The notes below the pieces were generated by a model. The model did no database searches and was not told where the DNA came from. It saw only the letters and a list, made by a program, of their open reading frames with translations. This document shows positions 16,547-44,100 of a stretch of DNA of 64,000 nucleotides, one piece after another; position 1 is the stretch's first letter; each line of letters starts with the position of its first letter. The DNA is from Obrimoposthia wandeli (Eukaryota). Position numbers and translations under genes: made by a program. Where the stretch lies: the NCBI GenBank assembly GCA_977020255.1, contig CDROCS010006010.1:1-64000 (forward strand), written 5' to 3'.

Positions 16547-16547
16547 A

Positions 16548-20820: not shown

Positions 20821-20829
20821 AGTCACCCA

Positions 20830-21900: not shown

Positions 21901-21970
21901 AACACCCAACACCCATGGAAATATGTGATATTGGCTCCATCCGAAAGGCGCGAAAAATGTTTTTGGGACC

Positions 21971-22113: not shown

Positions 22114-22389
22114 AGCTTCCTGTTACAAATCATCAATTATTATTACATCTTCTTTTTTCAATCTTTCACACCAATTCGCATCAAATCCTTCAATAAATTT
22201 TATTCCCTTCAACTTGCAAACGTATGTTTGGGTTAATCCACTTTCACCTCCTTCACCATAATGCCAATAAATATTTTTGAAACTAGAATTGAAAATAGAT
22301 TCATTTTGCAACAATTTACATACGAATTGTGTCTTTCCACTTCTACTGGGACCAACTATTTGAAATACAGAATTATTATTTAGCTCCAT
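22114..22389 (-). pseudogene. N-terminal half of the outer packaging ATPase
   Basis: MELNNNSVFQIVGPSRSGKT...IIIDDL*; contiguous with 9330-9682 once the insert and one TSD copy are removed. Confidence 0.9.
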
Positions 22390-22732
22390 TACATATACTC
22401 TTTCATATTTAATATTGTTTGTATTATCATAGAAGTTTCCTTATTTAAAATTATAATGCCAGATCTACAGTAGATGAAATACAAAAATTAATTAATGAAT
22501 ATTTGGCTATAATTTTATTTATTTGCGTTCGATTTCTAAATTCTCGAATAACGTGTGATCTAACCAATATTTCAATATTATTTCTTGTTGTATCATTATT
22601 TTTTTAATTCTGATAAAATTTGTTTCACCTCTATTTTTCCTGAAAAAAAATTCGTAGACAAGAGAATCCACTTCATTGTCGATATTTATAGTATAATTCA
22701 TTTGAAACAATTATTAATTGAAATAGGTTTGT

Positions 22733-23215
22733 TTATAGAAAAGATAACAAATTGTAATAAAATATATTTTCTAAAATCGATTCAAGAGTGTATTGATAAT
22801 TCAAATTTTTCAATCCCAAGACCAAAACTTTACTACCAGAAAATATTTTTACACATGGCAGTGTAAGCTTCAAATACCTGAGAGCAGGAAAATTTTCATA
22901 TTCAAACATGCATTCTTCTTTCATTTTCTCTGCAATTTTATAAAGATTTACTGGTTTCCCGATATGTATTTGATATTATGAAAATTGATTTTAATTCCAA
23001 ATGGTAAATTGATCTCATTCAGCGGTGTTATGCATCCCATAACACGACACTTCCTAAATAAATTCAATATGAAAATGAAATAAAAACTAACCTGAAAAAA
23101 ACCCTGTGAAACCATCAAACATTTTCACATATTGTTTCGGCTTCCAATCATTGAATGGTACGTGCAAAATATAATCTTTTATTCTTCCTTTATAATTTAT
23201 TATTACGGGTTTCAT
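22733..23215 (-). pseudogene. TBP-like gene of the outer element, same 38-nt intron (23054-23091)
   Basis: MKPVIINYKG...FTGFFSG| exon 1 is in frame; exon 2 is frameshifted; FEYENFPALRYLKL..CVKIFSGSKVLVLGLK. Confidence 0.75.
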
Positions 23216-23385
23216 TAGACTAAAATAGTTTTTCTGTAAATTCTTCTTTACATATGTCTGAACCTGCTTTTTATTGCACAATTCTTTTAAATATTTTGCA
23301 AATATGGATTTAGTTCAATCAAATTCAATAGTTTAGTTATGTTAATCAATGAGATTTATGTCTTTCATACAATTTAATAAAAAAA

Positions 23386-23637
23386 GTGGAAAATAAATAT
23401 CTAGTTAAAATTTTTACAACATCTGATATTGATCAATTGAAACATATTTTAGGGTTTTCCATACCATATTATGCATATGAAGGAAATTCTTTCCAGCTTG
23501 AAACTGATACCAGTCTGGCTTTTAGAGATGACCTAGGATATTTGATTGTTCCAATTTTAGATGAAGAACTATGGAATATTTCAATACGTCTTAATGAATA
23601 TTATGCTGATGGTTATGAAAAAATACAACATCTGTGA
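23386..23637 (+). CDS. Accessory protein X2, a diverged paralog of X1 (10125-10607)
   Basis: NSFQLETDTSLAFRDDLG...WNISIRL aligns with NEFYIRGPDEAFLDDYG...WTVTIRL. Confidence 0.55.
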   Translation: MENKYLVKIFTTSDIDQLKHILGFSIPYYAYEGNSFQLETDTSLAFRDDLGYLIVPILDEELWNISIRLNEYYADGYEKIQHL

Positions 23638-24637
23638 ACTCTGAGTGAAGCCAATATGGTGTTTTATATTTGATTATTTAAATAAATATTTTCTCCTAAT
23701 AATACTAATAATATGAGTATGGCGTACATATTTTTGTCCGAAGAAGCATAAAAATGTAGTCATACTCATACAAAATTATCATCTTAAATCTCGTCAACGG
23801 CTAGTCGATGGGGTCAATATGGATTCCTGTGGTATTCTATACTAACTTTTAAGTTTCATCCTTGGAGGTAGGATGTGAAATTCATATAATTTCCCTCCAT
23901 ACACACATGTATGATTTTAAAGAACAAAGGTTGTTTTTGTAATTATTTGTAGACTTTGACTTAATCGTCTTTTTGGGATACAGATATCGCGACAAAATGT
24001 TACGATAGGCAAGATTAAACGTTGAATCGATGATGACCAGTTCTGTCTAGAACTTGTTGAATTTACTAATAAATTTATACCACTTTTTTGGTAATTAAAT
24101 TTCGAATTTACAACAACAAAAAATTATATAAATTGTCATTCTTTATAAATATTGTATTTGTATTTTTATATCCGACATCAATTATGAAATACTTTGGTGA
24201 TAATTATATTTTTTGTAGTCAAAGATGATATGAGAAAATTTTAGCTGCATTGGTCTTTTGAGCAGTTGGAACTATTTACCCACCTGAGTTTTAGTGGATA
24301 TAAAAAAATGAAATGTTACAGACGATTCCCTTAAAGAAGTAAATAAACAAGATTCATGAAATTTTATTAAAAAAAGATAAAATAAAATCTTCTTTCATGA
24401 TGGGTGATAAAAATATACGTTCTTTGTCATTTATAGTTGTCGACAATGTAGAAAAATGTATAGAAAAATATCTAAGTTCAGAAAAACATGAAAAATCTTT
24501 ATAAAACAAATCAATTGAGTTCTTGAAATTTTGATGTGCAATCTCAAAACATGAAACATAATTGAAATACAATCTATTTAATAGATTATCAGGATTTATT
24601 CTCGTTAAAACTGATTATCTTAAAAAAAACAAGATTA

Positions 24638-26570
24638 TTATCTTAGATCCTCATCAGTTGCTCGTTCTTCTTCACACTGATCATCAGCTGGAGATTCAGA
24701 TTCTTCTCCTAGATCCTCATCAGTTGCTCGTTCCTCTTCACACTGATTGTCAGCTGGAGATCCGTCTTGTTCTTCTAGATCCTCATCAGTTGCTCGTTCT
24801 TCTTCAAACTGATCGTCAGCTGGAGACCCGGCTTGTTCTCTTAGATCCTCATGAGTTGCTCGTTCCTCTTCACACTGATCATCAGCTGGAGATTCAGATT
24901 CTTCTCCTAGATCCACATCAGTTTCTTTTTCTTCAGCAAACTGATCGTCAGCTAGAGACCCTGCTTGTTCTCCTAGATCCCCATCAGCTGCTTGTTCTTC
25001 TTCACACTGATCAGCAGCTGTATATTCAGATTCTTCTCCTAGATCCACATCAGTTTCTTGTTCTTCAGCAAACTGATCGTCAGCTAGAGACCCTGCTTGT
25101 TCTTCTAGATCCTCATCAGTTGCTCGTTCTTCTTCACACTGATAATCAGCTGGAGATTCAGATTCTTCTCCTAGATCCACATCAGTTTCTTGTTCTTCTT
25201 CAAACTGATCGTCAGCTGGAGACCCGGCTTGTTCTCTTAGATCCTCATCAGTTGCTCGTTCTTCTTCACACTGATAATCAGCTGGAGATTCAGATTCTTC
25301 TCCTAGATCCACATCAGTTTCTTGTTCTTCAGCAAACTGATCGTCAGCTAGAGACCATGCTTGTTCTCCTAGATCCTCATCAGTTGCTCGTTCTTCTTCA
25401 AACTGATCGTCAGCTGGAGACCCGGCTTGTTCTCCTATATCTTCATCAGTTGCCCGTTCTTCTTCACACTGATCATCAGCTGGAGATTCAGATTCTTCTC
25501 CTAGATCCACATCAGTTTCTCGTTCTTCAGCAAACTGATCGTAAGCTAGAGACCCTGCTTGTTCTCCTAGATCCTCATCAGTTGCTCGTTCTTCTTCATA
25601 CTGATCGTCAGCTGGAGACGAAGCTTGTTCTGCTATATCTTCATCAGTTGCTCGTTCTTCTTCACACTGATCGTCAGCTAAAGACGAAGCTTGTTCTGCT
25701 AGATCTTCGTCAGTTGCTTGTTCTTCCTCAAACTGATCGTCAGATGGAGACCCATCTTGTTCTCCTAGATCTTCATCAGTTGCTCGTTCTTTTTCACACT
25801 GATCATAAGCTGGAAACACTATAACAGCTGGAACTGACGGATAGAAATTTTCTTTTTTGGCATCTTTATTGTTAATAGACATGAGCATCTGCATCGCACC
25901 TTCTTCATCCTTGGATTCATCTTCCGTATACAACGGTACTTCCTCTTCATATTCCTTTTTATCGTCCCAGTCCCTGATAACAGATATCTTATTGTTAACT
26001 CTGTCTACTACCACTCGAACCTCCACTTCTTCGTTTTTATCGTCACAGTCACTATCAAAATTTTTATCATTTTTCAGACTAAACTCCACTCCCATTTCGA
26101 TTGAACCAGCTCTACTTTTCAATTCTACAGAATTCAAATATTCTGCATCTACACAGTCATTCTCAGTGCCGGTCAGTTTACCATCAAAACTAGTTTGTGT
26201 GACCAATATATTTCCCTCTGCATCTCCAATATACCCAGCAACCGTAGATCTATCTACATTGTCAACAAAATCTTGTCTGCTGCCTTCAGATGGCATACTC
26301 CACTCAACTCCGTTGTCTACATCCTCATAGACTCCTGAAGGTCGTGCATTTGATTCTTGGTGGACCTCAAGCTTGTTCCTGTATTTCTGATTGTCGTATT
26401 TGTCCTTAAAATCGCCCACCGCAAGCCCTGGTATGCCGTAATAACTTACACTTAGCCCACTTTCGTAAGCTGATAGATTAGGACGACGTTCTATAAGTTG
26501 TGGTGTATCATAATGATCTTTGGCTTCATCATCGTCGTCAATGGTTGCTTCATTACTGAGATGGAATGAT
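24638..26570 (-). CDS. Duplicated terminal exon of the host receptor: acidic cytoplasmic tail with about 18 x 22-aa repeats
   Basis: Acceptor tttcatttttag|A at 26571, open to TAA at 24638-24640; paralog of 38331-41184. Confidence 0.75.
24640..25810 (-). repeat. 66-bp coding tandem repeat (DDQxEEExATDEDLxEQAGSxA), about 18 units
   Basis: 22-aa period in the translation. Confidence 0.95.
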
Positions 26571-26759
26571 CTAAAAATGAAAACTTCCGTTATACATTCA
26601 GTCACTTACACATACACAGTCAATCTCAGTCATAACCACAGTCACGTTCATTTTCGAAATCACATTAACGGTCCCAGGCTCGGTCAGTCATAGTTACATA
26701 GCCACAGTAACAGCCATAGTCACAGTGACATACATTTCTGTAATCAGTCACAGTCACTC

Positions 26760-27170
26760 AGTCATACTGTCACAGTCACACAGTCATACTGTCACAGTCA
26801 CACAGTCATACTGTCACAGTCACACAGTCATACTGTCACAGTCACACAGTCATACTGTCACAGTCACACAGTCATACTGTCACAGTCACACAGTCATACT
26901 GTCACAGTCACACAGTCATACTGTCACAGTCACACAGTCATATATTCACAGGCACACAGTCACACAGTCATACTGTCACAGGCACACAGTCATAATGTCA
27001 CAGTCACACAGTCAAAATGTCACAGACACACAGTCATACTGTCACAGTCACACAGTCATAATGTCACAGGCACACAGTCAAAATGTCACAGACACACAGT
27101 CATAATGTCACAGGCACACAGTCATACTGTCACAGGCACACAGTCATAATGTCACAGGCACACAGTCAAA
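26760..27170. repeat. 22-bp intronic satellite (CACAGTCACACAGTCATACTGT), about 18 units
   Basis: Direct inspection. Confidence 0.95.
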
Positions 27171-27180
27171 TAGGCCTTGC

Positions 27181-27283
27181 CTTGTACGCAGTTTTTTTCG
27201 GTTTATCCATAAAGCAGCGCCACCACAGATGAGACAAAGGCCAAAGAATATCCCAAGTACACAACCGACAATTGTCCATGTCC
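27181..27283 (-). CDS. Duplicated transmembrane exon of the host receptor
   Basis: ttgtttcag|GG...WTIVGCVLGIFFGLCLICGGAALWINRKKLRTR|GCAAGG (GC donor); 103 nt, phase 1 to 2. Confidence 0.8.
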
Positions 27284-27344
27284 CTGAAACAATTCGTATT
27301 TGATGTGAATAAACATTGGAAATAGCATTGAATCATCCACTTAC

Positions 27345-27415
27345 AGGTTCCGGTTTGGAATTCATAACTGCCCGCTGTGAAGAATCCGTTTGGTGAGTAT
27401 GCTCTAAAGGCAGTC
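27345..27415 (-). CDS. Duplicated juxtamembrane exon of the host receptor
   Basis: tttag|G...TAFRAYSPNGFFTAGSYEFQTGT|GTAAGT; 71 nt, phase 2 to 1. Confidence 0.8.
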
Positions 27416-28799
27416 CTAAATTGGAGTTACAATAATTAATCGTTGCACATTAGAAATTAGAACTTATTCTGCACATTTTATTCTCCACTATCTAATGAAG
27501 TCATCTAAGAAACAAGGGTATATTTTAATTTCCACATGATAATGAATGAGTAATTTCACATTCAGAAATAATGTTGATTGAAACATCTGAAATAAAGAAA
27601 TTGACAGAAAGCAGTCATCCGCATTTGTGCTCTACATTAAAAGAGGTCGTATGCGTTATGCCCCCTTCAATTTGACAATGGCATCGGTTGATGTTCCCAC
27701 ATTAAATGTAAAGATAAACCATTCAAATACCGATTGCAGAGTCAGGGGGCCGGGTTGGCGTTGTGTGGGGCAACATTTTGATCAGACTATCCATCATTGG
27801 AGATATGGACGCTTTCATAATCCCGTCTCACTTGCCAAACAATCTCGGTGTCACATTGGCAAAACACTGCACAACACGACGTTTGTTGTTTAATAGGACA
27901 ATATTGAGCGGAGTTTTGCATTGCTTCGAATATGCCAAGCGAAGTTACCAATGAAGTTACTTAAAAATACAATAAGTACAGAAGCATAAAGATGTTGATG
28001 GAAAATTTGAATTTTTATAATGAAAACAATTTATTGACTTTTTAATTTTTATTTTATAAGAAATTTCCGAACATTCTTTGTATAAAAACGAACTAAAGTT
28101 ATCTAGTAATGATCCAATCTTTCCGTTTATCACTATGTATAAATGTCATTTGCTGATAAAAACATTTCCCATGTTTATTACCTAAATCACCAATTTTCTG
28201 GATAAAAATCTTAATGAGAATGAAAAATACAGTTTTAATGACATTCAACATCCAAGAATATCTTTACAAATTGCTTTAATAATTTCAACTCTATGCGTAG
28301 AAGAGGTAAAAATTTATTTATTTTTCATTTGACCAACTTTATCAAAATGTGAGATGATTATGACAAGCATGCAAAGCCTAGGATTTATCTTTATCTCCAG
28401 TTGAACATGGGAAATAATTACAATTCGTTGATTATAAATTGCCATTTTGTGACCAAAATATACAATTTTTAAGTATCAATGAAGCAAAAAATATTAAGAC
28501 ACTTTTATAATTGAATATAAGTATTTTATTAAAAATATTAGAAGTTATATTATTTTAAAATTATGAGATTTATGAAAATTGACAAAAACGTATATAATAT
28601 CATTTAACTTAAATTTAATAGGAGGTAGAAAATTTTCGAGAATATATTGAAATCAGCGCAAAAAATAGATTATTTTTTCATTACTAATAAATTTTGGATG
28701 AGTTTTAGATCGATGAATTTTTTAAAATATATCTTCAATAACCAATAGTATTTGGAACATAGTCGTATCTGGAAAGGTGAATGATTAGAAGTACTGGCG

Positions 28800-29308
28800 A
28801 ATAATGATTTTTCTTGAATGAAAGAACTTCAAAGGGACCTTTAAAATGCGATTGATTGTTTGCTCCATTTCTTCCACATCGATTTTGATACATCAAGCTA
28901 ACTTTGTCGCCAATCTTATTTTCAAAATTGGTTGTCTCAAGGTCGACAATCTCATCTCAAATGTTAATCATGGAATGGACCCAATCATTATATGATACGT
29001 CTTCATTAGGGTTACCTGGGCATTTTGAAGTGCAAAATTTGTGTACGAATTGAAATTAAAATAGGGTGTAAAACATCTGGCAAAAGATTCTACTACCCTC
29101 TTTCCCATTATTCGATTGTTCCTCTCTGTCAGTATGTTAGCCTGCTCCTGAAACACTGATGCTACTGGCTGTTGACTCTTTCAGAAATGCTGCTCACAAA
29201 TTCTCCTCCATGATCATTGATCTGAACATCTACAGCACATGAATGTCTACATACAATATATTCGAATATAAATTCCATAACCAAATCCGCAGTCTCATCC
29301 CTAATGCT
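28800..29308 (-). pseudogene. Ty3/Gypsy-type integrase remnant, truncated at the duplication junction
   Basis: INDHGGEFVSSIS, QANILTERNNR and KTYHIMIGSIP resemble the rve core (xDQGxEF, QxNGxxERxN, TPYxLMxGRxP). Confidence 0.7.
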
Positions 29309-29650
29309 GAGGCTTATAGTCAAAGCCAACCAGGTGGAGAATTACCATATTTTGTTTGTACACAATATGGATCTGGCTGGCTTAGAACATTAGGTAGATA
29401 TTTAAAAGAGACTCGGACATTTTATATCAAAATTAGGAAAGGATTACCTTTCGTCTAATGACAATAAACTAATACCAACTTTTAAGAAGCATGGGCTTGA
29501 TGAACTTGATAATGTTTTACCTGAAGTTGCTAATTTGATTAGAAAACGTAAATCAAATAAAAGCCAAGGAGGTAGTGGATTTAAAAGTAAAAAGAAGCAA
29601 AAAATTAATATAAACAAACGTAAGAAAGTTGAAGGAACAATATTTGCAAA

Positions 29651-30879
29651 ATGAGTTGCGCCAAAACCGAATTGTGTATTTTTGATAAACCTCTTCTACA
29701 AGTAGTTGTAGATAATGCTTCCTTTGAAGAAATATTTCTAGTTAACTCACTTTCAGGAACCACTTTAACCGAATTAGAATTTAATATGAATGGTTCCAAT
29801 AGCGAGTATTTAGATTTGAATGATACTTTGCTTTATGTTCAAATAAAAGTATTAAAACGGGATGGTACTAATTTAGATGAAAATGCCGATGTAACACTTG
29901 TAAATTATCTCTTTAATTCTTTATTTAGTGATGCCATTGTTACTCTTAATAATGTCAAAATTGAAGGTGGAAATTCTTCCTATGCTCATAAAGCTTTGAT
30001 TGAAAGTCTTTTGAATTATAGTACTGATACTCAAAATACTAATTTGGCAACCATTGGTTATGATAAAACGGTCGCAACTCGCAAAGAATGGATTACAGGT
30101 TCTAAAGCTTACGAAATATGTGGGTCTTTGAGATTGAATTTCTTTGAATAACCGAAATATTTAATTCCTGGTGTTAATGTACATCTTCGTTTGCAACGTA
30201 ATAAATGGCATTTTTCTTTGATAAGCACAGACGTTCTAAAACCTAGACTTGATGTTTTGAATGCAAAATTGTATGTTCGAAGAGTTAAAACCGAGCAATC
30301 AGTTTTAATGGCACATAATATATGAATGGAAAAAAACAATGCTTGTTATCCTATTAGAGAAACTAAACTTATATCTTATTCTTTAGGTACGGGTACACAA
30401 ACTTTTAATAAGGATCAGATTTTTGGTGATGTAAGATTACCGAAATTCATTTTAATTTCTTTTCAAAAAACTGCAAAGTATCTAGGAAATTATACGACAG
30501 ATGCACCTCAATTTGACAATCTTAATGTAGGTTCAGTGACACTTTCAAGAAATACTGATTATCGCAAAACATATAAAACAGATTTCGAAGGTAATGCTTA
30601 TGCTTTGGCTTATACGCAATCTATTATTTGGAATTTGGGCCAACTAGATAAAAATATAAACATTGGTATTTCTTTCACTGAGTCTAAAATCAGCTGCCTG
30701 TTCTTCACATTTGTTTTGGCACCAGACTTTGATATAAACCAATGCCAACTACCAAAGGATGGGAATTTACGACTAGAATTAAGTTCAATGCAGCTTTAAC
30801 ACATCCTACTACGGTGCTTATTTATGGAGTGTTTGATTCCGAAATACAAATCAATAAAAACAGAACTGTCATATTATAG
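29651..30879 (+). pseudogene. Major capsid protein, duplicate copy
   Basis: Shares the TAA at 30149-30151 and adds TGA at 30323-30325 plus a frameshift near 30780. Confidence 0.92.
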
Positions 30880-30880
30880 A

Positions 30881-31270
30881 ATGAAGTAAGACATTTTTTA
30901 AATTTATATTTATTAATTTTTATTTAGTTCAGTATAAGTATAAGAATCAGCAGAGAAGGTCCTGGGTGATAAATTCAATGGAGTTTATCCTATTGATATG
31001 AATCCAATTTTTCAATATGGAGGTTACACTATCAATACTCATACTTCGAATTTACCAGGAGAACATTGGATAGCTATTTATGTTAGAGAGTGGACAATAC
31101 ATGTATTTGATCCACTTGCAATGTATTATCCACAAAACTCGTTTCAACTATTCAAAAAGGACAAAGAAGAGTATTTTACAACAAGATACAATATCAGGAT
31201 CCTGATACGAGAAACTGTGGACATTTATGTATTTTATGGTTATCGTTGCAAAACGATTAGTGTGTTATAA
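30881..31270 (+). pseudogene. Adenain-like protease, duplicate copy (42-nt intron 30886-30927)
   Basis: NLPGEHWIAIY...VFDPL; same intron and stops as copy 1. Confidence 0.85.
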
Positions 31271-31510
31271 AAATAAATATTTTTAATTTTTTTTTAAATC
31301 CCTAAAAATATAAGGGTAAAATAATAAAAGACATTAGACGAAATTTTGTTTAATACATTTATTAAAAACAACATCACAGTGAGATCTGTCAGCAAAGATA
31401 AGGTCCATCCTAAAAAATGTATTGAAATAACAAAAAGTTAGAGTCAAGGTGCCATAGGGATCTAAAATTTTAAAAAACTAATCTAAAAAAATTCAAAAAA
31501 TGAAAACCGT

Positions 31511-32026
31511 TTAAATTCTGAAGTGTCCATAAGCCAGGCTAGCGTTTTTTTCTACCCAAAAGCGCTTGTCGTCATTACTACTCAAAGTGATTTTGGTTGA
31601 TTTATGGGAATACAGTTGATGGGCTCTTGAAATAAATCTAGTTTGCTCAACACTTTCAATACACCCAGTATCGTAAACTTTCCGGTAGGTCTCATGTGTA
31701 AAATTGTTTCTTTCCACACCCTTTGCTTTCATTGAACATGTATTATTAGATGCATGTAAACTGTGGCATTTAGGGCGTAGGAAAATACAATCATCATACG
31801 AAACCTGTCCCTCGCTTTCATCCTTAAATTTCCCGATAATATCTTTTAAACTCATAGAATGTAGAGGATGGTTAGCGGGATATTTATGGGTATCTAATAA
31901 GTTGTCCCTAAACATTGCCGGTAATAATTGATTATATAAACTAACATTCCTGTATTCTAAAAAGAAAGAGTCAGTGTCAGTGTAAACGGGTTGAATCACT
32001 GCAACTGGAATTGGAGCAGGTGAGGC
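31511..32026 (-). pseudogene. pPolB C-terminal fragment, duplicate copy
   Basis: YTDTDSFF...KAKGV...DDKR. Confidence 0.9.
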
Positions 32027-32526
32027 CTATGAATCGCGCACCAATTGCACGATATCCCTCTTCTTGTTGTTGGCCGTGAAACAGGATAGGTGAACTCGAT
32101 GTTCAAGAAAGAAGTCTCGAAACTCCTTCTCCTCCATTGTTCTGCAGAAGATACAGACGAAGAATTGAAGCCCGCGAGACTTTGTCCGCTAGTAGGCGGA
32201 CATTATCTCCATGCAGGTCTCTCCTCCATGCGAAGCCAAAGCACCACAATATGCTGGAAACAGGATACAAGTAATATGAAATAATAAATATTAATAAAGA
32301 AATAATAAGTATAGATTCTTACCATAGTCATTATTTCAAATAGTCGGGGATTTTAATGAAGAAAGTGTTTGCTTATATACTAAAATTTATGCACACATGC
32401 TCTTTTCCTATTGGATTAAAAAATTGAATTTTATTAAGAAGGATTGTTTATCTGTTAAAAGGTTGAAAAAAAATTTTTTATTCCTCCAATCAAAAGAATT
32501 ATTTGTAATTGAATTAGAAGAATTGT

Positions 32527-33015
32527 TTATCTACATGTCAAGTAATAATAAGATAGACTTAAACATTTTTTATATGCGCAATGGTCACCATGATTACGAT
32601 ATGGACAGCAAATATTTCCTGGAATTTTTAATAGATGATCACGTGAAATATTTAAAGTATTCAACCTCAATTTGGGAAAATAATTTTTTAAAGTCTTATA
32701 CTTTTTGACATCCATTTCATCTAAAACATAAAAAATTCCATTTTAAATATCAAAATTATATTTTATTGTTTCGAAAATGCATATTTCACAAAAAGCCATA
32801 TGTCCTTCTTTCCATTTTAATAAATGAAAATAATTAGTTAGATATAAATTAGTAAATTTTTTCTTATAATCTAAACTTTTAAACGGGATATATATTTGAA
32901 ATATGAAATGCAAAGGATTAAAAATGTTGCATACATCCATAATACATAATTCTTTTATAATATAATCACCATTTTTGTTAATGAAAGCCTCAAAATCTAT
33001 GATATATTCCTGCAT
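32527..33015 (-). pseudogene. DEDD-like / Cys-His accessory gene, duplicate copy
   Basis: ORFs 32743-33015 and 32527-32715. Confidence 0.65.
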
Positions 33016-33411
33016 AATTATCTAAATTTGCAGCAAATCCCGTTGTTTATAACGAAAATAATCATTAATCAAAAATTTATTAAAATAACAAAGTGCTCAG
33101 GATTCAGTCTTTCATGTTAATATTGGTATATATTGTCAATTCTCTTATGAATATTAAAATAAATTATATTAAATGTAAACATACCTAAATATTTCGAAAT
33201 TAAATTACATAATTTATCTCCAACAATTTCCACAGTATCATTTTCTGAAAAGTAATTTTTTTATAATCTTCCATTAAATCTGGAGATAATTTTATGTATA
33301 ACTTATTCCAATTTTTATTATCCATTTTACAAAATACATTATATATAATTTTGTTTATATTTAGACAATTATGTAACATAATCAATAAAGAAAAAATAAT
33401 AATCAAAAATT

Positions 33412-33717
33412 TTATTTTTTTGTAGAAGGACCCTCTTCCGGTTTAATCTGGAGTATTCTCTTTCTTGCAGTACGCCGAACATCCTCCATCTCTTCTCTTC
33501 TTTTTTCATCCACCTTCCTTTTTTCCATTTCGATCTTCTTATTCCATTCCACGATGCGACGTCGTTCTGCTAGCCTCCTATCTTGTATATCCACCCGACG
33601 ATTCCACTCGGTCGCGACAACAATATACAGATTCTGATTAAGGACCCTCTTTCTTAAGTCCCCTTTCTTCTCATTTATTCTGATGTTTGCTTCAATTTTC
33701 GTTACCAGACTCTTCAT
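33412..33717 (-). CDS. Coiled-coil-like Maverick protein, duplicate copy
   Basis: Intact 101 aa, two substitutions versus 19079-19384. Confidence 0.6.
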   Translation of the reverse strand: MKSLVTKIEANIRINEKKGDLRKRVLNQNLYIVVATEWNRRVDIQDRRLAERRRIVEWNKKIEMEKRKVDEKRREEMEDVRRTARKRILQIKPEEGPSTKK

Positions 33718-33949
33718 TTTAATGAATTCATTTTTTAATTATGAAGAGGTTAATAAATTTGAACCTATATATATAAATTTAAGATATTTTTTAATCTAAT
33801 TAAACTATATATTTTTATTTATCAAATGAGAGTTTAATAAATATATAACTTATCATTGCATTTAAACCTAATAAACTTAAAGATAGTATTTTAATATTTC
33901 TAAATTTAAATTTTTTTAAAAATAAATTTTAAGAAGAAAAGACATGAAA

Positions 33950-35160
33950 TTAATTTTTATAAATTATATTCTTAAACATCTTTAAGTCATCATTAGGATC
34001 ATCCGGATCGAAATCCCTCCGGCTAAGTATTATTGGAGAAAGCGGTACTGGCTCTTTCTTCTTTGGCCGTCCTGGTTTCTTTTTCGGCTTCACAGGTTGT
34101 TGTACAGCAATTGTCCTTATCTCAGGTTAGCAACTTTTTGGGAGGAGGTGCAGCCGATGTTGAGGGCCCCGACATAGAAGTCCTCTTCCGTGGGGCTTTC
34201 TTCTGTTTCTCCTCCTTCTCACGCTGAAGCTGGCGTGAAACGGCATCCTGTTGCCCTCGCGAATCTTGAAGCATTGCCGGTGTATACAGTTCCGCCAGGA
34301 ATTCATCCAACCCAGCTTCATCCCAGGCCCTCTTCAAGTTCTGACTGGTTGTTGGAGATGCAGTCTCCCAAGCCTTGGTCAAATTTGATGTCTCCTGTAG
34401 GCGTCGTTGACTTGACGGTGGACTAATCTCGATCGGTGAGACTGAGATCCTCTCGTATAGAATTGGCCCGTCGTCCACTGGAGATGAGAGAATCTCCTGC
34501 CGTCCAATCACCGTCTCAGAAGAATGTTGAATTGAGGTGCTACATTTTTTCGAGCGCTTCGTCTTCTTCACCTCTGCTCACTTCGTCCGTTTCTTGGGGA
34601 AAAGAGTAATTTCTCCCCATGTCTCCTCAATTATCTAGACGGGTTCCTGCAAAATATTAATAAAATGTAAATAAATAAATAATTTACCTCAATGACGGGC
34701 AGGTTAGCCTGTTTCACCAACTTGGCCTTCTTCCGAGTGTGGGTTTTGACCCGATGGCGTTGCGGTTTCTTAACTGCCGCTTGCTTCCTATCCACCGGTT
34801 GAATAGGCGTCGGCTCTTCGTGGATGTTCTCCATCTATGTGAATTATTAAATTTAATATCTAAATAATTTACATTAAAATTATCTGGAGACGCTAGGTAT
34901 CGGAGCTGACTCCTGACTCCTTGGTTCTTCTCTTGGAGTTGAGCTGGCCAATGAGGCTTCTTCTTCCAACAGGTTCGCTCTTGCTGCTGCTTTTCCTTCG
35001 CTCACCACCGATGAGTCTTGACTATCTAAGTCAATGTATTGCAACGGTGGTGGCGTTTGCTGCTGCACTGGAAAGAGATCCCCATAGAGTTGAACATCCG
35101 AAGGGGCGAGTGGTATATGTTAGGGTCTTGGGTATGACACGGGTCGTCTACAAGTGTAGT
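33950..35160 (-). pseudogene. AT-hook protein gene, duplicate copy (41-nt intron 34647-34687)
   Basis: Colinear with 19617-20820. Confidence 0.6.
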
Positions 35161-35164
35161 CACC

Positions 35165-35615
35165 CACCACCCACCGACTTACACCTACCACCCACCGACT
35201 TTCACCCAACACCCATCGACTTTCACCCACCACCCAACACCCACCGACTTTCAACCACCACTCATTGACTTACACCAACCACCCACCTACTTTCACCCAT
35301 CACCCACCGACTTATACCTACCACCCACCGACTTTCACCCAACACCCATCGACTTTCACCCACCACCCAACACCCACCGAGTTTCACCCACCACTCATTG
35401 ACTTACACCTACCACCCACGACTTACACCCACCACCCACCAATTTATCCCCACCACCCACTGACTTTCACCCATCACCCGTCGACTTTCACCCATCACCC
35501 ACCGACTTTCACCCATCACCCAACGACTTTCAGCCATCACCCACCGACTTTCACCCATCACCCAACGACTTTCAGCCAACATCCAACGACTTACACCCAC
35601 CGTCCAACACCCAAC
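35165..35615. repeat. C/A-rich subterminal minisatellite, shorter copy
   Basis: Same unit as 20830-21900. Confidence 0.95.
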
Positions 35616-35805
35616 ACCCATGGAAATATGTGATATTGGCTCCATCCGAAAGGCGCGAAAAATGGTTTTGTCCTTTAAAACCGTGCATGTGTGTGGAGCA
35701 AAATTTCACTCCACACACCTACAGGAAATTTTACTCCACACACTTGCACGGTTTTATAGGACAGAGGGGAAGGGGTGTGGATTAGACCAGACACATCCAC
35801 CTACT

Positions 35806-37620
35806 AGCTTCCTGTTACAAATCATCAATTATTATTACATCTTCTTTTTTCAATCTTTCACACCAATTCGCATCAAATCCTTCAATAAATTTTATTCCCT
35901 TCAACTTGCAAACGTATGTTTGGGTTAATCCACTTTCACCTCCTTCACCATAATGCCAATAAATATTTTTGAAACTAGAATTGAAAATAGATTCATTTTG
36001 CAACAATTTACATACGAATTGTGTCTTTCCACTTCTACTGGGACCAACTATTTGAAATACAGAATTATTATTTAGCTCCATTACATATACTCTTTCATAT
36101 TTAATATTGTTTTTATTATCATAGAAGTTTCCTTATTTAAAATTATAATGCCAGATCTACAGTAGATGAAATACAAAAATTAATTTATGAATATTTGGCT
36201 ATAATTTTATTTATTTGCGTTCGATTTCTAAATTCTCGAATAACGTGTGATCTAACCAATATTTCAATATTATTTCTTGTTGTATCATTAGTTTTTTAAT
36301 TCTGATAAAATTTATTTCACCTCTATTTTTCCTGAAAAAAAATTCGTAGACAAGAGAATCCACTTCATTGTCGGTATTTATAGTATAATTCATTTGAAAC
36401 AATTATTAATTGAAATAGGTTTGTTTATAGAAAAGATAACAAATTGTAATAAAAAATATTTTCTAAAATCGATTCAAGAGTGTATTGATAATTCAAATTT
36501 TTCAATCCCAAGATCAAAACTTTACTACCAGAAAATATTTTTACACATGGCAGTGTAAGCTTCAAATACCTGAGAGCAGGAAAATTTTCATATTCAAACA
36601 TGCATTCTTCTTTCATTTTCTCTGCAATTTTATAAAGATTTACTGGTTTCCCGATATGTATTTGATATTATGAAAATTGATTTTAATTCCAAATGGTAAA
36701 TTGATCTCATTCAGCGGTGTTATGCATCCCATAACACGACACTTCCTAAATAAATTCAATATGAAAATGAAATAAAAACTAACCTGAAAAAAACCCTGTG
36801 AAACCATCAAACATTTTCACATATTGTTTCGGCTTCCAATCATTGAATGGTACGTGCAAAATATAATCTTTTATTCTTCCTTTATAATTTATTATTACGG
36901 GTTTCATTAGACTAAAATAGTTTTTCTGTAAATTCTTCTTTACATATGTCTGAACCTGCTTTTTATTGCACAATTCTTTTAAATATTTTGCAAATATGGA
37001 TTTAGTTCAATCAAATTCAATAGTTTAGTTATGTTAACCAATGAGATGTATGTCTTTCATACAATTTAATATAAAAAGTGGAAAATAAATATCTAGTTAA
37101 AATTTTTACAACATCTGATATTGATCAATTGAAAAATATTTTAGGGTTTTCCATACCTGATTATGCATATGAAGGAAATTCTTTCCATCTTGAAACTGAT
37201 ACCAGTCTGGCTTTTAGAGATGACCTAGGATATTTGATTGTTCCAATTTTAGATGAAGAACTATAGAATATTTCAATACGTCTTAATGAATATTATGCTG
37301 ATGGTTATGAAAAAAATACAACATATGTGAACTCTGAGTGAAGCCAATATGGTGTTTTATATTTTATTATTTAAATTAATATTTTCTCCTAATAATACTA
37401 ATAATATGAGTATGGCGTACATATTTTTGTCCGAAGAAGCATAAAAATGTAGTCATACTCATACAAAATTATCATCTTAAATCTCGTCAACGGCTAGTCG
37501 ATGGGGTCAATATGGATTCCTGTGGTATTCTATACTAACTTTTAAGTTTCATCCTTGGAGGTAGGATGTGAAATTCATATAATTTCCCTCCATACACACA
37601 TGTATGATTTTAAAGAACAA
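35806..37620 (-). mobile_element. Duplicate of the outer-element segment (ATPase N-terminus 35815-36081, TBP-like 36425-36907 with intron 36746-36783, X2 at about 37078-37330)
   Basis: Colinear with 22114-23930. Confidence 0.85.
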
Positions 37621-38330
37621 AGGTTGTTTTTGTAATTATTTGTAGACTTTGACTTAATCGTCTTTTTGGGATACAGATATCGCGACAAAATGTTACGATA
37701 GGCAAGATTAAACGTTGAATCGATGATGACCAGTTCTGTCTAGAACTTGTTGAATTTACTAATAAATTTATACCACTTTTTTGATAATTAAATTTCGAAT
37801 TTACAACAACAAAAAATTATATAAATTGTCATTCTTTATAAATATTGTATTTGTATTTTTATATCCGACATCAATTATGAAATACTTTGGTGATAATTAT
37901 ATTTTTTGTAGTCAAAGATGATATGAGAAAATTTTAGCTGCATTGGTCTTTTGAGCAGTTGGAACTATTTACCCACCTGAGTTTTAGTGGATATAAAAAA
38001 ATGAAATGTTACAGACGATTCCCTTAAAGAAGTAAATAAACAAGATTCATGAAATTTTATTAAAAAAAGATAAAATAAAATCTTCTTTCATGATGGGTGA
38101 TAAAAATATACGTTCTTTGTCATTTATAGTTGTCGACAATGTAGAAAAATGTATAGAAAAATATCTAAGTTCAGAAAAACATGAAAAATCTTTATAAAAC
38201 AAATCAATTGAGTTCTTGAAATTTTGATGTGCAATCTCAAAACATGAAACATAATTGAAATACAATCTATTTAATAGATTATCAGGATTTATTCTCGTTA
38301 AAACTGGTTATCTTATAAAAAACAAGATTA

Positions 38331-41184
38331 TTATCTTAGATCCTCATCAGTTGCTCGTTCTTCTTCACACTGATCATCAGCTGGAGATTCAGATTCTTCT
38401 CCTAGATCCTCATCAGTTGCTCGTTCCTCTTCACACTGATTGTCAGCTGGAGACCCTGCTTGTTCTTCTAGATCCTCATCAGTTGATCGTTCTTCTTCAC
38501 ACTGATCATCAGCTGGAGATCCGTCTTGTTCTTCTAGATCCTCATCAGTTGCTCGTTCTTCTTCAAACTGATCGTCAGCTGGAGACCCGGCTTGTTCTCT
38601 TAGATCCTCATCAGCTGCTTGTTCTTCTTCACACTGATAAGCAGCTGGAGATTCAGATTCTTCTCCTAGATCCCCATCAGTTGCTCGTTCCTCTTCACAC
38701 TGATTGTCAGCTGGAGATCCGTCTTGTTCTTCTAGATCCTCATCAGTTGCTCGTTCTTCTTCAAACTGATCGTCAGCTGGAGACCCGGTTTGTTCTCTTA
38801 GATCCTCATCAGTTGCTCGTTCTTCTTCACACTGATCATCAGCTGGAGATTCAGATTCTTCTCCTAGATCCTCATCAGTTGCTCGTTCCTCTTCACACTG
38901 ATTGTCAGCTGGAGATCCGTCTTGTTCTTCTAGATCCTCATCAGTTGCTCGTTCTTCTTCAAACTGATCGTCAGCTGGAGACCCGGCTTGTTCTCTTAGA
39001 TCCTCATCAGCTGCTTGTTCTTCTTCACACTGATAAGCAGCTGTATATTCAGATTCTTCTCCTAGATCCACATCAGTTTCTTGTTCTTCAGCAAACTGAT
39101 CGTCAGCTAGAGACCCTGCTTGTTCTTCTAGATCCTCATCAGTTGCTCGTTCTTCTTCACACTGATCGTCAGCTGGAGACCCGGCTTGTTCTCTTAGATC
39201 CTCATCAGTTGCTCGTTCTTCTTCACACTGATCATCAGCTGGAGATTCAGATTCTTCTCCTAGATCCTCATCAGTTGCTCGTTCCTCTTCACACTGATTG
39301 TCAGCTGGAGATCCGTCTTGTTCTCTTAGATCCTCATCAGCTGCTTGTTCTTCTTCACACTGATAAGCAGCTGTATATTCAGATTCTTCTCCTAGATCCA
39401 CATCAGTTTCTTGTTCTTCAGCAAACTGATCGTCAGCTAGAGACCCTGCTTGTTCTTCTAGATCCTCATCAGTTGCTCGTTCTTCTTCACACTGATCATC
39501 AGCTGGAGATTCAGATTCTTCTCCTAGATCCACAGCAGTTTCTTGTTCTTCAGCAAACTGATCGTCAGCTAGAGACCCTGCTTGTTCTTCTAGATCCTCA
39601 TCAGTTGCTCGTTCTTCTTCACACTGATCATCAGCTGGAGATTCAGATTCTTCTCCTAGATCCACATCAGTTTCTTGTTCTTCAGCAAACTGATCGTCAG
39701 CTAGAGACCCTGCTTGTTCTCCTAGATCCTCATCAGCTGCTTGTTCTTCTTCACACTGATCAGCAGCTGCATATTCAGATTCTTCTCCTAGATCCACAGC
39801 AGTTTCTTGTTCTTCAGCAAACTGATCGTCAGCTAGAGACCCTGCTTGTTCTTCTAGATCCTCATCAGTTGCTCGTTCTTCTTCACACTGATCGTCAGCT
39901 GGAGACCCGGCTTGTTCTCTTAGATCCTCATCAGCTGCTTGTTCTTCTTTACACTGATAAGCAGCTGTATATTCAGATTCTTCTCCTAGATCCACATCAG
40001 TTTCTTGTTCTTCAGCAAACTGATCGTCAGCTAGAGACCCTGCTTGTTCTTCTAGATCCTCATCAGTTGCTCGTTCTTCTTCACACTGATCATCAGCTGG
40101 AGATTCAGATTCTTCTCCTAGATCCACAGCAGTTTCTTGTTCTTCAGCAAACTGATCGTCAGCTAGAGACCCTGCTTGTTCTCCTAGATCCTCATCAGTT
40201 GCTCGTTCTTCTTCAAACTGATCGTCAGCTGGAGACAAAGCTTGTTCTGTTAGAACTTTGTCAGTTGCTCGTTCTTCTTCACACTGATCGTCAGCTAGAG
40301 ACGAAGCTTGTTCTGCTAGATCTTCGTCAGTTGCTTGTTCTTCCTCAAACTGATCGTCAGATGGAGACCCATCTTGTTTTCCTAGATCTTCATCAGTTGC
40401 TCGTTCTTTTTCATACTGATCATAAGCTGGAAACACTATAACAGCTGGAACTGACGGATAGAAATTTTCTTTTTTGGCATCTTTATTGTTAATAAACATG
40501 AGCATCTGCATCGCACCTTCTTCATCCTTGGATTCATCTTCCGTATACAACGGTACTTCCTCTTCATATTCCTTTTTATCGTCCCAGTCCCTGATAACAG
40601 ATATCTTATTGTTAACTCTGTCTACTACCACACGAACCTCCACTTCTTCGTTTTTATCGTCACAGTCACTATCAAAATTTTTATCATTTTTCAGACTAAA
40701 CTCCACTCCCATTTCGATTGAACCAGCTCTACTTTTCAATTCTACTGAATTCAAATATTCTGCATCTACACAGTCATTCTCAGGGCCGGTCAGTTCACCA
40801 TCAAAACTAGTTTGCGTGACCAATATATTTCCCTCTGCATATCCAACATACCCAGCAACCGTAGATCTATCTACATTGTCAACAAAATCTTGTCCGCTGC
40901 CTTCAGATGGCATACTCCACTCAACTCCGTTGTCTACATCCTCATAGACTCCTGAAGGTCGCGCATTTGATTCTTGGTGGACCTCAAGCTTGTTCCTGTA
41001 TTTCTGATTGTCGTATTTGTCCTTAAAATCGCCCACCGCAAGCCCTGGCATGCCGTAATAACTTACACTTAGCCCACTTTCATAAGCTGATGGATTAGGA
41101 TGAAGTTCTTTTAGTATTGGTGTATCATGATCATTGGCTTCAACATTGTCGTCAATGGTTGCTTCATTACTGAGATGGAATGAT
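38331..41184 (-). CDS. Terminal exon: 950-aa acidic cytoplasmic tail with Tyr motifs and about 32 x 22-aa repeats
   Basis: Acceptor at 41185-41186; AYES, YYGM, VYEDV and EYEEE motifs; 66-bp repeat 38335-40430; AATAAA at 38288-38293 (minus strand). Confidence 0.8.
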
Positions 41185-44100
41185 CTAAAAATGAAAACTT
41201 CCGTTATACATTCAGTCACTTACACATACACAGTCAATCTCAGTCATAACCACAGTCACATTCATTTTCGAAATCACATTAACGGTCCCAGGCTCGGTCA
41301 GTCATAGTTACATAGCCACAGTAACATCCATAGTCACAGTGACATACATTTCTGTAATCAGTCACAGTCACACAGTCATACTGTCACAGTTACACAGTCA
41401 TAATGTCACAGGCACACAGTCATACTGTCACAGTCACACAGTCATACTGTCACAAACACAGTCATACTGTCACAAACACAGTCACACAGTCATACTGTCA
41501 CAATCACACAGTCATAATATCACAGTCACACAGTCATAATGTCACAGGCACACAGTCATAATGTCACAATCACACAATCATAATTTCACAGGCACACATC
41601 AAAATATCACAGACACACAGTCATAATGTCACAGTCACACAGTCATAATGTCACAGACACACAGTCATACTGTCTCAGTCACACAGTCATAATTTCACAG
41701 GCACACAGTCAAAATGTCACAGACACACAGTCATAATGTCACAGGCACACAGTCATACTGTCACAGGCACACATTCATAATGCCACAGTCACACAGTCAT
41801 AATGTCACAGTCACACAGTCAAAATGTCACAGACACACAGTCATACTGTCACAGTCACACAGTCATAATGTCACAGACACACAGTCATACTGTCACAGTC
41901 ACACAGTCATACTGTCACAGTCACACAGTCATAATGTCACAGGCACACAGTCATACTGTCACAGGCACACAGTCATAATGCCACAGTCACACAGTCATAA
42001 TGTCACAGTCACACAGTCAAAATGTCACAGACACACAGTCATACTGTCACAGTCACACAGTCATAATGTCACAGTCACACAGTCATAATGTCACAGGCAC
42101 ACAGTCATACTGTCACAGTCACACAGTCATACTGTCACAGTCACACAGTCATACTGTCACAGTCACACAATCATACTGTCACAGTCACACAGTCATAATG
42201 TCACAGTCACACAGTCATAATGTCACAGACACACAGTCATACTGTCACAGTCACACAGTCATAATGTCACAGTCACACAGTCATAATGTCACAGACACAC
42301 AGTCATACTGTCTCAGTCACACAGTCATAATTTCACAGGCACACAGTCAAAATGTCACAGACACACAGTCATAATGTCACAGGCACACAGTCATACTGTC
42401 ACAGGCACACATTCATAATGCCACAGTCACACAGTCATAATGTCACAGTCACACAGTCAAAATGTCACAGACACACAGTCATACTGTCACAGTCACACAG
42501 TCAAAATGTCACAGACACACAGTCATACTGTCACAGTCACACAGTCATAATGTCACAGACATACAGTCATACTGTCACAGTCACACAGTCATACTGTCTC
42601 AGTCACACAGTCATAATTTCACAGGCACACAGTCAAAATGTCACAGACACACAGTCATAATGTCACAGGCACACAGTCATACTGTCACAGGCACACATTC
42701 ATAATGCCACAGTCACACAGTCATAATGTCACAGTCACACAGTCAAAATGTCACAGACACACAGTCATACTGTCACAGTCACACAGTCATAATGTCACAG
42801 ACACACAGTCATACTGTCACAGTCACACAGTCATACTGTCACAGTCACACAGTCATACTGTCACAGGCACACAGTCATACTGTCACAGGCACACAGTCAT
42901 AATGCCACAGTCACACAGTCATAATGTCACAGTCACACAGTCAAAATGTCACAGACACACAGTCATACTGTCACAGTCACACAGTCAAAATGTCACAGAC
43001 TCACAGTCGTGACTGTCACAGTCACACAGTCATAATGTCACAGGCACACAGTCAAAATGTCACAGACACACAGTCATACTGTCACAGGCACACAGTCATA
43101 CTGTCACAGTCACACAGTCAAAATGTCACAGACACACAGTCATAATGTCACAGTCACACAGTCAAAATGTCACAGACACACAGTCAAAATGTCACAGACA
43201 CACAGTCATAATGTCACAGTCACACAGTCATAATGTCACAGTCACACAGTCAAAATGTCACAGACACACAGTCATAATGTCACAGTCACACAGTCAAAAT
43301 GTCACAGACACACAGTCAAAATGTCACAGACACACAGTCATAATGTCACAGGCACACAGTCATACTGTCACAGGCACACAGTCATAATGTCACAGGCACA
43401 CAGTCAAATAGGCCTTGCCTTGTACGCAGTTTTTTTCGGTTTATCCATAAAGCTACGCCACCGCCGATGAGACAAAGGCCAAAGAATATCCCAAGTACAC
43501 AACCGACAATTGTCCATGTCCCTGAAACAATTCGTATTTGATGTGAATAAACATTGGAAATAGCATTGAATCATCCACTTACAGGTTCCGGTTTGGAATT
43601 CATAACTGCCCGCTGTGAAGAATCCGTTTGGTGAGTATGCTCTAAAGGCAGTCCTAAATTGGAGTTACAATAATTAATCGTTGCACATTAGAAATTAGAA
43701 CTTATTCTGCACATTTTATTCTCCACTATCTAATGAAGTCATCTAAGAAACAAGGATATATTTTAATTTCCACATGATAATGAATGAGTAATTTCACATT
43801 CAGAAATAATGTTGATTGAAACATCTGAAATAAAGAAATTGACAGAAAGCAGTCATCCGCATTTGTGCTCTACATTAAAAGAGGTCGTATGCGTTATGCC
43901 CCCTTCAATTTGACAATGGCATCGGTTGATGTTCCCACATTAAATGTAAAGATAAACCATTCAAATACCGATTGCAGAGTCAGGGGGCCGGGTTGGCGTT
44001 GTGTGGGGCAACATTTTGATCAGACTATCCATCATTGGAGATATGGACGCTTTCATAATCCCGTCTCACTTGCCAAACAATCTCGGTGTCACATTGGCAA

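What the first reader, a model, noticed from the sequence alone, without database searches (positions are those of the whole stretch)
24638..43653. Two alternative TM+cytoplasmic-tail cassettes for one receptor, created by the duplication
The duplication copied exactly the last three exons. Both sets keep all splice sites (including the GC donor), stay open for 640 and 950 codons, and have a nearby AATAAA, while the co-duplicated viral genes gained new lesions. The upstream exon (donor 46643-46644) is phase-compatible with either acceptor (43654 or 27416). One ectodomain could thus be coupled to tails with about 32 or about 18 acidic repeats and different Tyr motifs: a possible nascent system of alternative last exons.
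Basis: partly seen in the sequence, partly recalled or inferred. Interest (0 to 1): 0.8.

Follow-up and report, generated by a model that had tools for sequence, protein, structure and literature searches.

The report
Young tandem duplication of receptor tail exons
A very recent head-to-tail duplication has given one membrane receptor gene two complete copies of its last three exons. Nothing yet shows that the second copy is used, so it looks like an ordinary young duplication rather than a working system of alternative tails.

Summary
Window 14974-29307 (unit A) and 29308-45544 (unit B) form an exact head-to-tail duplication with a gap-free, non-homologous junction. Each unit carries a Maverick-like fragment and the last three exons of a minus-strand receptor gene: stalk exon, TM exon with a GC donor, and tail exon. 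Splice sites are identical in both. Both cassettes are in phase with the single upstream exon (donor 46644/46643). Both end in a stop followed 38 nt later by AATAAA. The tails hold 18 and 32 acidic 22-aa repeats.

The gene belongs to a lineage-specific family with 19 other tail exons in this genome. The paralogs examined have one cassette each.

The copies differ by only 0.2-1.4% in flanking DNA. Open frames are expected by chance (P about 0.29 for no stop), and pN/pS is 0.59 (p = 0.22). No RNA of this gene was found. One RNA-like run shows a paralog using the same splice sites. DNA contigs neither confirm nor refute the junction.

My odds:
- About 0.55: a real, very young duplication in which proximal cassette B is the working 3' end and distal A is idle.
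- About 0.15: nascent alternative last exons.
- About 0.2: a haplotype assembly artefact.

The parts
14974..29307 (.). Duplication unit A (distal to the gene's 5' part), 14.3 kb
   Evidence: Self-BLAST; breakpoints
29308..45544 (.). Duplication unit B (proximal), 16.2 kb. The junction A-end/B-start at 29307|29308 has no gap and only 1 nt of microhomology
   Evidence: no homology between the breakpoint flanks
46645..46869 (-). Single-copy upstream exon (membrane-proximal ectodomain). Donor GT at 46644-46643. The 5' boundary is approximate
   Evidence: weak PTP_tm hit E = 0.076; 87-91% identical in 10 paralogs
43583..43653 (-). Cassette B exon X (stalk, 71 nt), identical to A
43419..43521 (-). 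Cassette B exon Y (TM, 103 nt, GC donor); TM reads ...LIGGGVALW...
38331..41184 (-). Cassette B exon Z (cytoplasmic tail, 951 codons, 32 acidic 22-aa units, stop at 38333-38331)
27345..27415 (-). Cassette A exon X (71 nt)
   Evidence: spliced joint 27282/27344 in a paralog's RNA contig
27181..27283 (-). Cassette A exon Y (TM, GC donor); TM reads ...LICGGAALW...
24638..26570 (-). Cassette A exon Z (644 codons, 18 acidic units, stop at 24640-24638)
24644..25814 (-). 66-bp coding minisatellite of A (17.7 copies)
   Evidence: TRF; units
38337..40431 (-). 66-bp coding minisatellite of B (31.7 copies, interior rearranged relative to A)
26745..27168 (.). 22-bp TG-rich array in the Y-Z intron of A (19 copies; intron 610 nt)
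41477..43406 (.). The same 22-bp intron array in B (88 copies; intron 2,234 nt)
24595..24600 (-). AATAAA 38 nt after the stop of A. The equivalent signal in B is at 38288-38293
26465..26533 (-). Hyper-divergent patch at the start of the tail (B equivalent about 41079-41147): 14 differences in 70 nt, including an in-frame 3-nt indel that removes a Tyr in B
14974..20822 (.). Co-duplicated Maverick/Polinton-like fragment (capsid-like ORFs, PolB-like fragment); B equivalent 29308-35159; 1.35% diverged, 6 indel events
20823..21896 (.). 21-bp array (49 copies in A; 20 copies in B at 35160-35601)

Best explanation
This is a real, very young tandem duplication that may still be polymorphic. It arose by non-homologous joining, with 1 nt of microhomology, between a point inside a Maverick element downstream of the gene and a point in the intron before the last three exons. 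The gene is one member of a fast-expanding, lineage-specific family of single-pass receptors. These have an FN3-like ectodomain, a highly conserved TM module and an orphan acidic tail encoded partly by an unstable 66-bp minisatellite.

The event left two complete 3' cassettes. The proximal cassette B keeps the ancestral geometry, with a 3.0-kb intron as in the paralogs, and is expected to be the working 3' end. The distal cassette A sits 16 kb further on, behind B's identical acceptor and its poly(A) signals, and is most likely silent or rarely used. Both are intact because too little time has passed for decay, not because both are maintained by selection. Their differences (repeat number, four TM-exon changes, a 70-nt patch) come from minisatellite instability and ectopic gene conversion within the family.

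Shown: the structure, the intactness, the youth, the lack of a selection signal, the family context and the splice sites. Inferred: that the junction is real, that B is the default, and that A is idle.
For: Structure.

Junction:
- There are no Ns in the window, and the breakpoint flanks share no similarity. An overlap-based mis-join of two haplotypes has nothing to join on.
- Published false duplications on one scaffold are most often separated by a gap or by unsupported sequence (PMC9516828).
- The host's intron-bearing RNA-polymerase subunit genes appear once each, and this locus has no second contig. The assembly therefore looks haploid-collapsed here.

Youth: the unique intron has 3 substitutions and 1 indel in about 2 kb; the 3' flank differs by 0.88% and the Maverick part by 1.35%.

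No selection signal:
- P(no stop) is 0.29.
- pN/pS is 0.59 with p = 0.22.
- pN/pS among repeat units is 0.82.

Family:
- There are 19 other tail exons at 72-76% identity and more than 20 X/Y modules at 92-94%.
- Ten paralogs hold the upstream exon. In C2884 it lies about 2.6 kb from the cassette, and C2884 is colinear over the upstream exons.
- Repeat arrays number about 0, 3 or 7 units in the paralogs.

Gene conversion: both TM-exon states exist in paralogs.

Splice sites:
- A paralog's RNA contig joins the upstream exon to X and X to Y at the same sites.
- The GC donor is a GT in the C1276/C1977 paralogs.

Orphan tail: no homologue was found in two large protein searches.
Against: No read evidence for the 29307|29308 junction was obtained. 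The listed DNA contigs of three runs all stop matching at 29308, and two run on into unlike sequence. This is what B-type ends laid on A would do, but it is also what two alleles would do. The three minisatellites differ 2- to 4-fold between copies that are otherwise 98.6-99.8% identical, which is also typical of two haplotypes. All runs come from one sample. Nothing measures the use of A or B, so 'A is idle' rests on general rules of splice-site proximity and first poly(A) site use. The 70-nt patch has no donor in the assembly and could instead reflect diversifying selection on the two tails.
Confidence: 0.55

Rival explanations
1. Nascent alternative last exons. Some transcripts escape cleavage at cassette B, and the common donor at 46644 is spliced to the distal acceptor at 27416. 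One ectodomain is then made with either an 18-repeat or a 32-repeat tail, different TM residues and different Tyr motifs.
For: Both cassettes are complete, in phase and carry the same signals. They differ at protein level exactly where signalling could differ: a Tyr lost in B by the in-frame deletion, a Tyr gained in B (GYIGD versus GYVGY), 6 versus 10 Tyr in the arrays, and CGGA versus GGGV in the TM. The Y-Z intron differs 3.7-fold in a TG-rich array, which could modulate use of the weak GC donor. Tandem exon duplication is an established source of alternative isoforms (PMC9013439 and PMC9741552).
Against: There is no transcript evidence. There is no selection signal. The layout is absent from the paralogs examined. 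The proximal acceptor is identical, and poly(A) signals lie between the donor and the distal cassette. No RNA contig lies on 27459-29343, upstream of distal exon X.
Confidence: 0.15
2. Assembly artefact. A and B are the two haplotypes (or two individuals' alleles) of a single cassette, strung head to tail by the assembler, so the gene has one tail with allelic length variants.
For: Divergence of 0.2-2.6% with large VNTR length differences fits alleles. No listed contig bridges 29308. Another family pair (C5436/C4252) is 99.6% identical and may be haplotigs.
Against: The junction is seamless, lies inside a contig, has no gap and shows no sequence similarity between the joined ends. An assembler would need a chimeric read to make it. 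All three contigs that end at 29308 carry one mismatch to A. The only A/B difference in that last stretch is 29298 T/C, so they are probably B ends continuing into B's flank. No A-type end was seen leading into the flank. Host single-copy genes are not doubled.
Confidence: 0.2
3. The distal cassette acts on its own (own promoter or trans-splicing) as a separate small TM-plus-tail gene.
For: It has a free, strong acceptor, and a transcribed Maverick fragment lies upstream (RNA-like contigs on 29461-31080).
Against: There is no in-frame Met before the TM segment in exons X/Y. Those RNA contigs differ by 1-5% from this copy and come from other Maverick copies. No RNA contig lies on 27459-29343.
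Confidence: 0.03

Closest known systems
Tandem exon duplication giving alternative or mutually exclusive exons (reviewed in PMC9013439 and PMC9741552; from my own knowledge, Drosophila Dscam1 has alternative TM exons 17.1/17.2)
   Same: Homologous exons duplicated in tandem inside one gene, with splice sites and reading phase preserved, so either copy could be joined to the same upstream exon.
   Different: Here the unit is a whole 3' end (three exons plus stop plus poly(A) signal), so the choice would be between alternative last exons, not mutually exclusive internal exons. The event is extremely young (0.2-1.4% diverged) and not conserved, and use of the second copy is unshown. Most described cases are reported as ancient and highly expressed (PMC9741552 abstract).
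Partial (3'-end) tandem gene duplication or copy-number variant in an expanding gene family
   Same: A non-homologous breakpoint junction with 1-nt microhomology, a unit that includes neighbouring transposon DNA, near-identity of the copies, and a family with many recent paralogs.
   Different: Nothing essential. This is the class I file it under.
R3-type receptor protein tyrosine phosphatases (PTPRJ/DEP-1-like)
   Same: Single-pass receptor with FN3-like ectodomain exons. The last ectodomain exon weakly resembles the PTPRJ TM-proximal domain (E = 0.076).
   Different: There is no phosphatase domain. The cytoplasmic part is an orphan acidic tail with no Pfam hit and no homologue in two large searches. 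All ectodomain hits are below Pfam thresholds, and a genome-wide PTP_tm search did not pick up the family.
Heterotype false duplication in genome assemblies (PMC9516828)
   Same: Two near-identical neighbouring copies at allele-like divergence, with length-variable repeats.
   Different: There is no gap or unsupported filler between the copies, and the junction is non-homologous and inside a contig. Depth and k-mer criteria could not be tested.

Membership tests
Alternative last exons derived from tandem duplication | Two homologous terminal exon sets in tandem downstream of a shared donor, in the same orientation | tested here: met
Alternative last exons derived from tandem duplication | Each set has an intact acceptor, open frame, stop and poly(A) signal, and is phase-compatible with the shared exon | tested here: met
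   (identical splice contexts; one terminal stop each; AATAAA at +38 nt)
Alternative last exons derived from tandem duplication | Transcripts joining the shared exon to each set | not testable with these tools
   No run on record as RNA holds this gene.
Alternative last exons derived from tandem duplication | Both sets maintained by selection or conserved in relatives | tested here: not met
   pN/pS 0.59, p = 0.22; P(no stop by chance) 0.29. The paralogs examined have one cassette.
True tandem segmental duplication (versus heterotype false duplication) | No assembly gap or filler between the copies; the junction is a novel adjacency | tested here: met
   No N in the window; seamless junction; no similarity between the joined ends; criteria from PMC9516828
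True tandem segmental duplication (versus heterotype false duplication) | Reads spanning the junction, and full (not half) depth on each copy | tested here: inconclusive
   Only Logan contigs were available. The listed pieces end at 29308, none bridges it, and 158,104 pieces were not listed. Contig depth is not usable.
R3-type receptor tyrosine phosphatase | FN3-repeat ectodomain with a PTPRJ-type TM-proximal domain | tested here: inconclusive
   fn3 E = 0.018 and 0.0094, PTP_tm E = 0.076, all below the cut-offs; the genome-wide PTP_tm search missed the family
R3-type receptor tyrosine phosphatase | Cytoplasmic PTP catalytic domain | tested here: not met
   No Pfam family in the tail. The frame ends in a stop followed by a 3' flank that is conserved in paralogs.

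The most novel reading that the evidence does not exclude
The duplication is real and both cassettes are used. A single ectodomain would then be coupled, by choice of last exons, to tails of 18 or 32 acidic repeats with different TM residues and Tyr motifs. That would be an alternative-last-exon system caught within about 1% divergence of its birth. The 70-nt donor-less patch at the start of the tail would be the first sign of divergence between the two isoforms.
Probability: 0.12. Interest if true: 0.6.

Novelty: new member of a known kind. Interest (0 to 1): 0.3.

Why it matters
If the distal cassette were shown to be spliced to the shared exon, this would be a rare snapshot of how alternative 3' ends arise from a structural variant, before any regulatory refinement. 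As it stands it mainly documents three things. This receptor family grows by very recent duplication. Its acidic tail is encoded by an unstable coding minisatellite, with 0 to 32 units among family members. Ectopic gene conversion shuffles the TM module among paralogs. It is also a caution: intact duplicated exons at under 2% divergence are not evidence of function.

Tried and rejected
1. Reads. Both run searches found only five runs of one sample, all kept as contigs and none recorded as RNA. The single read-laying run (27169-31500) did not list a piece bridging 29308. I first read the 2,468-nt X1 contig that stops at 29308 and runs on for 966 unlike letters as evidence against the junction. 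I withdrew that after one search showed that A and B differ at only 3 places in 27807-29308. The contig's single mismatch fits a B-type end laid on A.

2. Depth ratios between the collapsed family contig and the A+B contig were tried as a copy-number gauge and rejected. The contig matches only about 3 assembled paralogs yet has 14.5 times the depth, so the numbers are not proportional to assembled copies.

3. A look-up of an ORF spanning the junction in public contig collections found nothing on record.

4. Homologues of the tail were sought so that transcript-derived proteins might tell A from B. None turned up in the word-indexed search or the exhaustive HMMER search.

5. A donor for the 70-nt patch was sought. 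It is absent from the 19 paralogs and from the rest of the assembly.

6. A TIR match between the mini-Maverick at 58.1-60.6 kb and the duplicated unit was sought. None was found.

7. SL trans-splicing onto the distal acceptor was considered only from memory of flatworm biology. It was not tested and is not relied on.
Full report
WHAT IS THERE

A self-comparison of the window and a read-out of the breakpoints show a perfect head-to-tail duplication. Unit A is 14974-29307 and unit B is 29308-45544. The window contains no N. The junction shares only one base (T) between the two joined ends. The 1-kb flanks of the two breakpoints have no similarity to each other beyond chance words. The window is positions 1-64000 of a 221-kb contig, in a 1.35-Gb assembly of 6,912 contigs.

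THE GENE AND THE CASSETTES

The gene runs on the minus strand. The right breakpoint falls in the intron between a single-copy exon ending at 46645 (donor GT at 46644-46643) and the first duplicated exon. Each unit holds three exons.

| Exon | Role | Cassette A | Cassette B |
|---|---|---|---|
| X | 71-nt stalk | 27415-27345 | 43653-43583 |
| Y | 103-nt transmembrane, ends in a GC donor (AAG\|gcaagg) | 27283-27181 | 43521-43419 |
| Z | tail | 26570-24638 | 41184-38331 |

- Splice-site contexts are identical in the two units.
- Joining the upstream exon to either cassette gives one open frame with a single terminal stop.
- AATAAA follows each stop after 38 nt.
- The X/Y intron and the join of the upstream exon to X are confirmed indirectly. 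One run of only 49 Mb of contigs behaves as RNA. It contains a spliced contig that skips 27283-27343 (GT..AG on the minus strand). Its overhang at 27417 matches the end of the upstream exon with one mismatch.
- That contig differs from cassette A at 8 of 168 positions, so it comes from a paralog, not from this gene.
- The GC donor is supported by family comparison. Most paralogs have GC at that position, and the C1276/C1977 pair has GT.

THE TAIL

Exon Z encodes about 250 non-repetitive residues followed by 22-residue acidic units (D plus E is about 42%). A has 18 units and B has 32. The first two and the last units are shared, and the interior order is rearranged. The non-repeat tail has no Pfam hit. 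It has no homologue among 5.8 billion word-indexed proteins or 1.84 billion cluster representatives searched exhaustively. By eye it carries several Tyr motifs, such as YEEE- and YxN-like ones. This is an inference only.

FAMILY CONTEXT

- The TM module (X, its intron and Y) occurs at 92-94% identity on more than 20 other contig positions.
- The tail exon occurs 19 more times, at 72-76%.
- The upstream exon occurs in at least 10 paralogs, at 87-91%.
- In C2884 the upstream exon lies about 2.6 kb from the cassette, as it does for B here. C2884 is colinear with this gene over at least seven upstream blocks.
- Paralogs carry about 0, 3 or 7 acidic units.
- Ectodomain pieces give only sub-threshold fn3 and PTP_tm hits, and a genome-wide PTP_tm search does not pick up the family. 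'RPTP-like ectodomain' therefore remains a resemblance, and there is no phosphatase domain.
- No examined paralog has two cassettes.

HOW OLD, AND IS THERE SELECTION?

Outside the arrays the two units differ as follows.

| Segment | Difference between A and B |
|---|---|
| About 2 kb of unique intron | 3 substitutions and 1 indel (about 0.2%) |
| 3' flank | 0.88% |
| Maverick-like part | 1.35% |
| Non-repeat tail exon | 2.6% |

The excess in coding DNA is concentrated in two clusters.
- Four changes lie within 12 nt of the TM exon (CGGA versus GGGV). Both states exist in paralogs, which points to a short ectopic conversion.
- Fourteen differences lie within 70 nt at the start of the tail, including an in-frame 3-nt deletion that removes a Tyr in B. 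No donor exists among the 19 paralogs or elsewhere in the assembly. This second cluster is unexplained.

Over the 309 non-repeat codons there are 18 non-synonymous and 8 synonymous differences. That gives pN/pS of 0.59, with Fisher p = 0.22. Placing 26 random substitutions on the 930-nt coding part leaves it free of stops in 29% of trials. Among the repeat units pN/pS is 0.82.

The Maverick-like part has 6 indel events in 5.85 kb, and several ORFs that are open in A are broken in B. That rate predicts less than one indel in the non-repeat coding part, where one in-frame indel is seen. The contrast 'receptor exons intact, viral genes newly broken' is therefore what chance gives at this age.

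IS THE DUPLICATION REAL?

Evidence for:
- The junction lies inside a contig, has no gap and joins unrelated sequences. An overlap-based assembler has nothing with which to join two haplotypes there.
- In the published survey of false duplications, copies on one scaffold were most often separated by a gap or by unsupported sequence, unlike true duplications (PMC9516828).
- The locus has no second contig.
- Intron-bearing host RNA-polymerase genes are not doubled.

Not settled:
- Only contigs of one sample were available. The listed DNA contigs of three runs stop matching at 29308, and two continue into unlike sequence.
- A and B are 99.8% identical in the last 1.5 kb. Each of these contigs has one mismatch to A, and the only A/B difference near the end is 29298 T/C. 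They are most simply B ends laid on A, which is expected under either hypothesis.
- No A-type end was seen leading into the unique flank. This leans weakly towards a real junction.
- The 2- to 4-fold differences in all three minisatellites fit alleles as well as young duplicates.

I put the artefact at about 0.2.

HOW IT MOST LIKELY WORKS

B keeps the ancestral intron geometry, and the transcribing polymerase meets it first. Its acceptor is identical to A's, and its poly(A) signals lie between the shared donor and A. By the general rules of splice-site proximity and first poly(A) site use (my own knowledge, not tested here), B should be the normal 3' end and A a silent or rare spare. No RNA-like contig lies on 27459-29343, upstream of distal exon X. 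That is weak negative evidence, because introns are rarely captured. The alternative-last-exon reading stays possible at about 0.15 and is directly testable, because the tail patch distinguishes the two cassettes at 14 of 70 nt.

COMPARISON AND NOVELTY

Tandem exon duplication as a source of isoforms is well established (PMC9013439 and PMC9741552). Partial tandem duplications in expanding families are common. This case is a new member of that kind. Its only unusual aspects are that a complete three-exon 3' end was copied, and how young the event is. Another note (s1-229598, unchecked) reports head-to-tail joined mitochondrial haplotypes in this assembly, which is why I kept the artefact hypothesis alive.

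Noticed in passing
window 26465-26533 (B: about 41079-41147): A patch of 14 differences in 70 nt, including an in-frame 3-nt indel, between cassettes that are otherwise about 99% identical. No donor sequence exists among the 19 paralogs or anywhere else in the assembly.
   Followed up: yes
G000 as a whole (e.g. C5705, C4896, C2834, C253, C506): The assembly is a holobiont. About 20 uninterrupted bacterial-type rpoB genes (1,270-1,390-aa frames) sit beside the intron-bearing host copies (C11, C2734). There are also several multi-copy 418-aa and 872-aa Rpb2-like frames of unclear origin (C3647, C767, C2497).
   Followed up: no
window 29309-31500: Summed contig depth over the Maverick-like part is 10^5-10^6, against about 68 for the neighbouring low-copy intron in the same run. 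The RNA-like run also has contigs on it. This Maverick lineage seems extremely abundant and transcribed.
   Followed up: no
window 20823-21896 and 35160-35601: A 21-bp array differs 49 versus 20 copies between the units. On the minus strand it reads as Trp/Gly/Val-rich heptads next to Pro/Ser-rich ORFs (19797-20917), possibly part of the Maverick polymerase's N-terminal extension noted elsewhere in this genome.
   Followed up: no
window 26745-27168 and 41477-43406: A TG-rich 22-bp array fills the intron after the GC donor and differs 19 versus 88 copies. Paralogs share it. It could influence use of the weak donor.
   Followed up: partly
L020/L019 (G000:C1977, C1276), TM exon donor: The GC donor of the TM exon is GT in this paralog pair, with the preceding AAG changed to AAA. 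This supports the exon boundary.
   Followed up: yes
L036 (C5436) versus L038 (C4252): Two family members on different contigs are 99.6% identical over 3.3 kb. They may be retained haplotigs or another very recent duplication.
   Followed up: partly
window 54448-54985: A 39-bp tandem array (13.8 copies, 94% matches) lies inside the receptor gene, open in frames on both strands. The paralog alignment stops at its edge, and it is unclear whether it is coding.
   Followed up: no
window 7378-9278 versus 13699-11785; 10746-11939 versus 23302-22124 and 36994-35816: Inverted copies of Maverick segments (integrase/ATPase at 92.5%; TBP-like/ATPase at 86%) suggest nested or head-to-head Maverick insertions just downstream of the receptor gene.
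   Followed up: no
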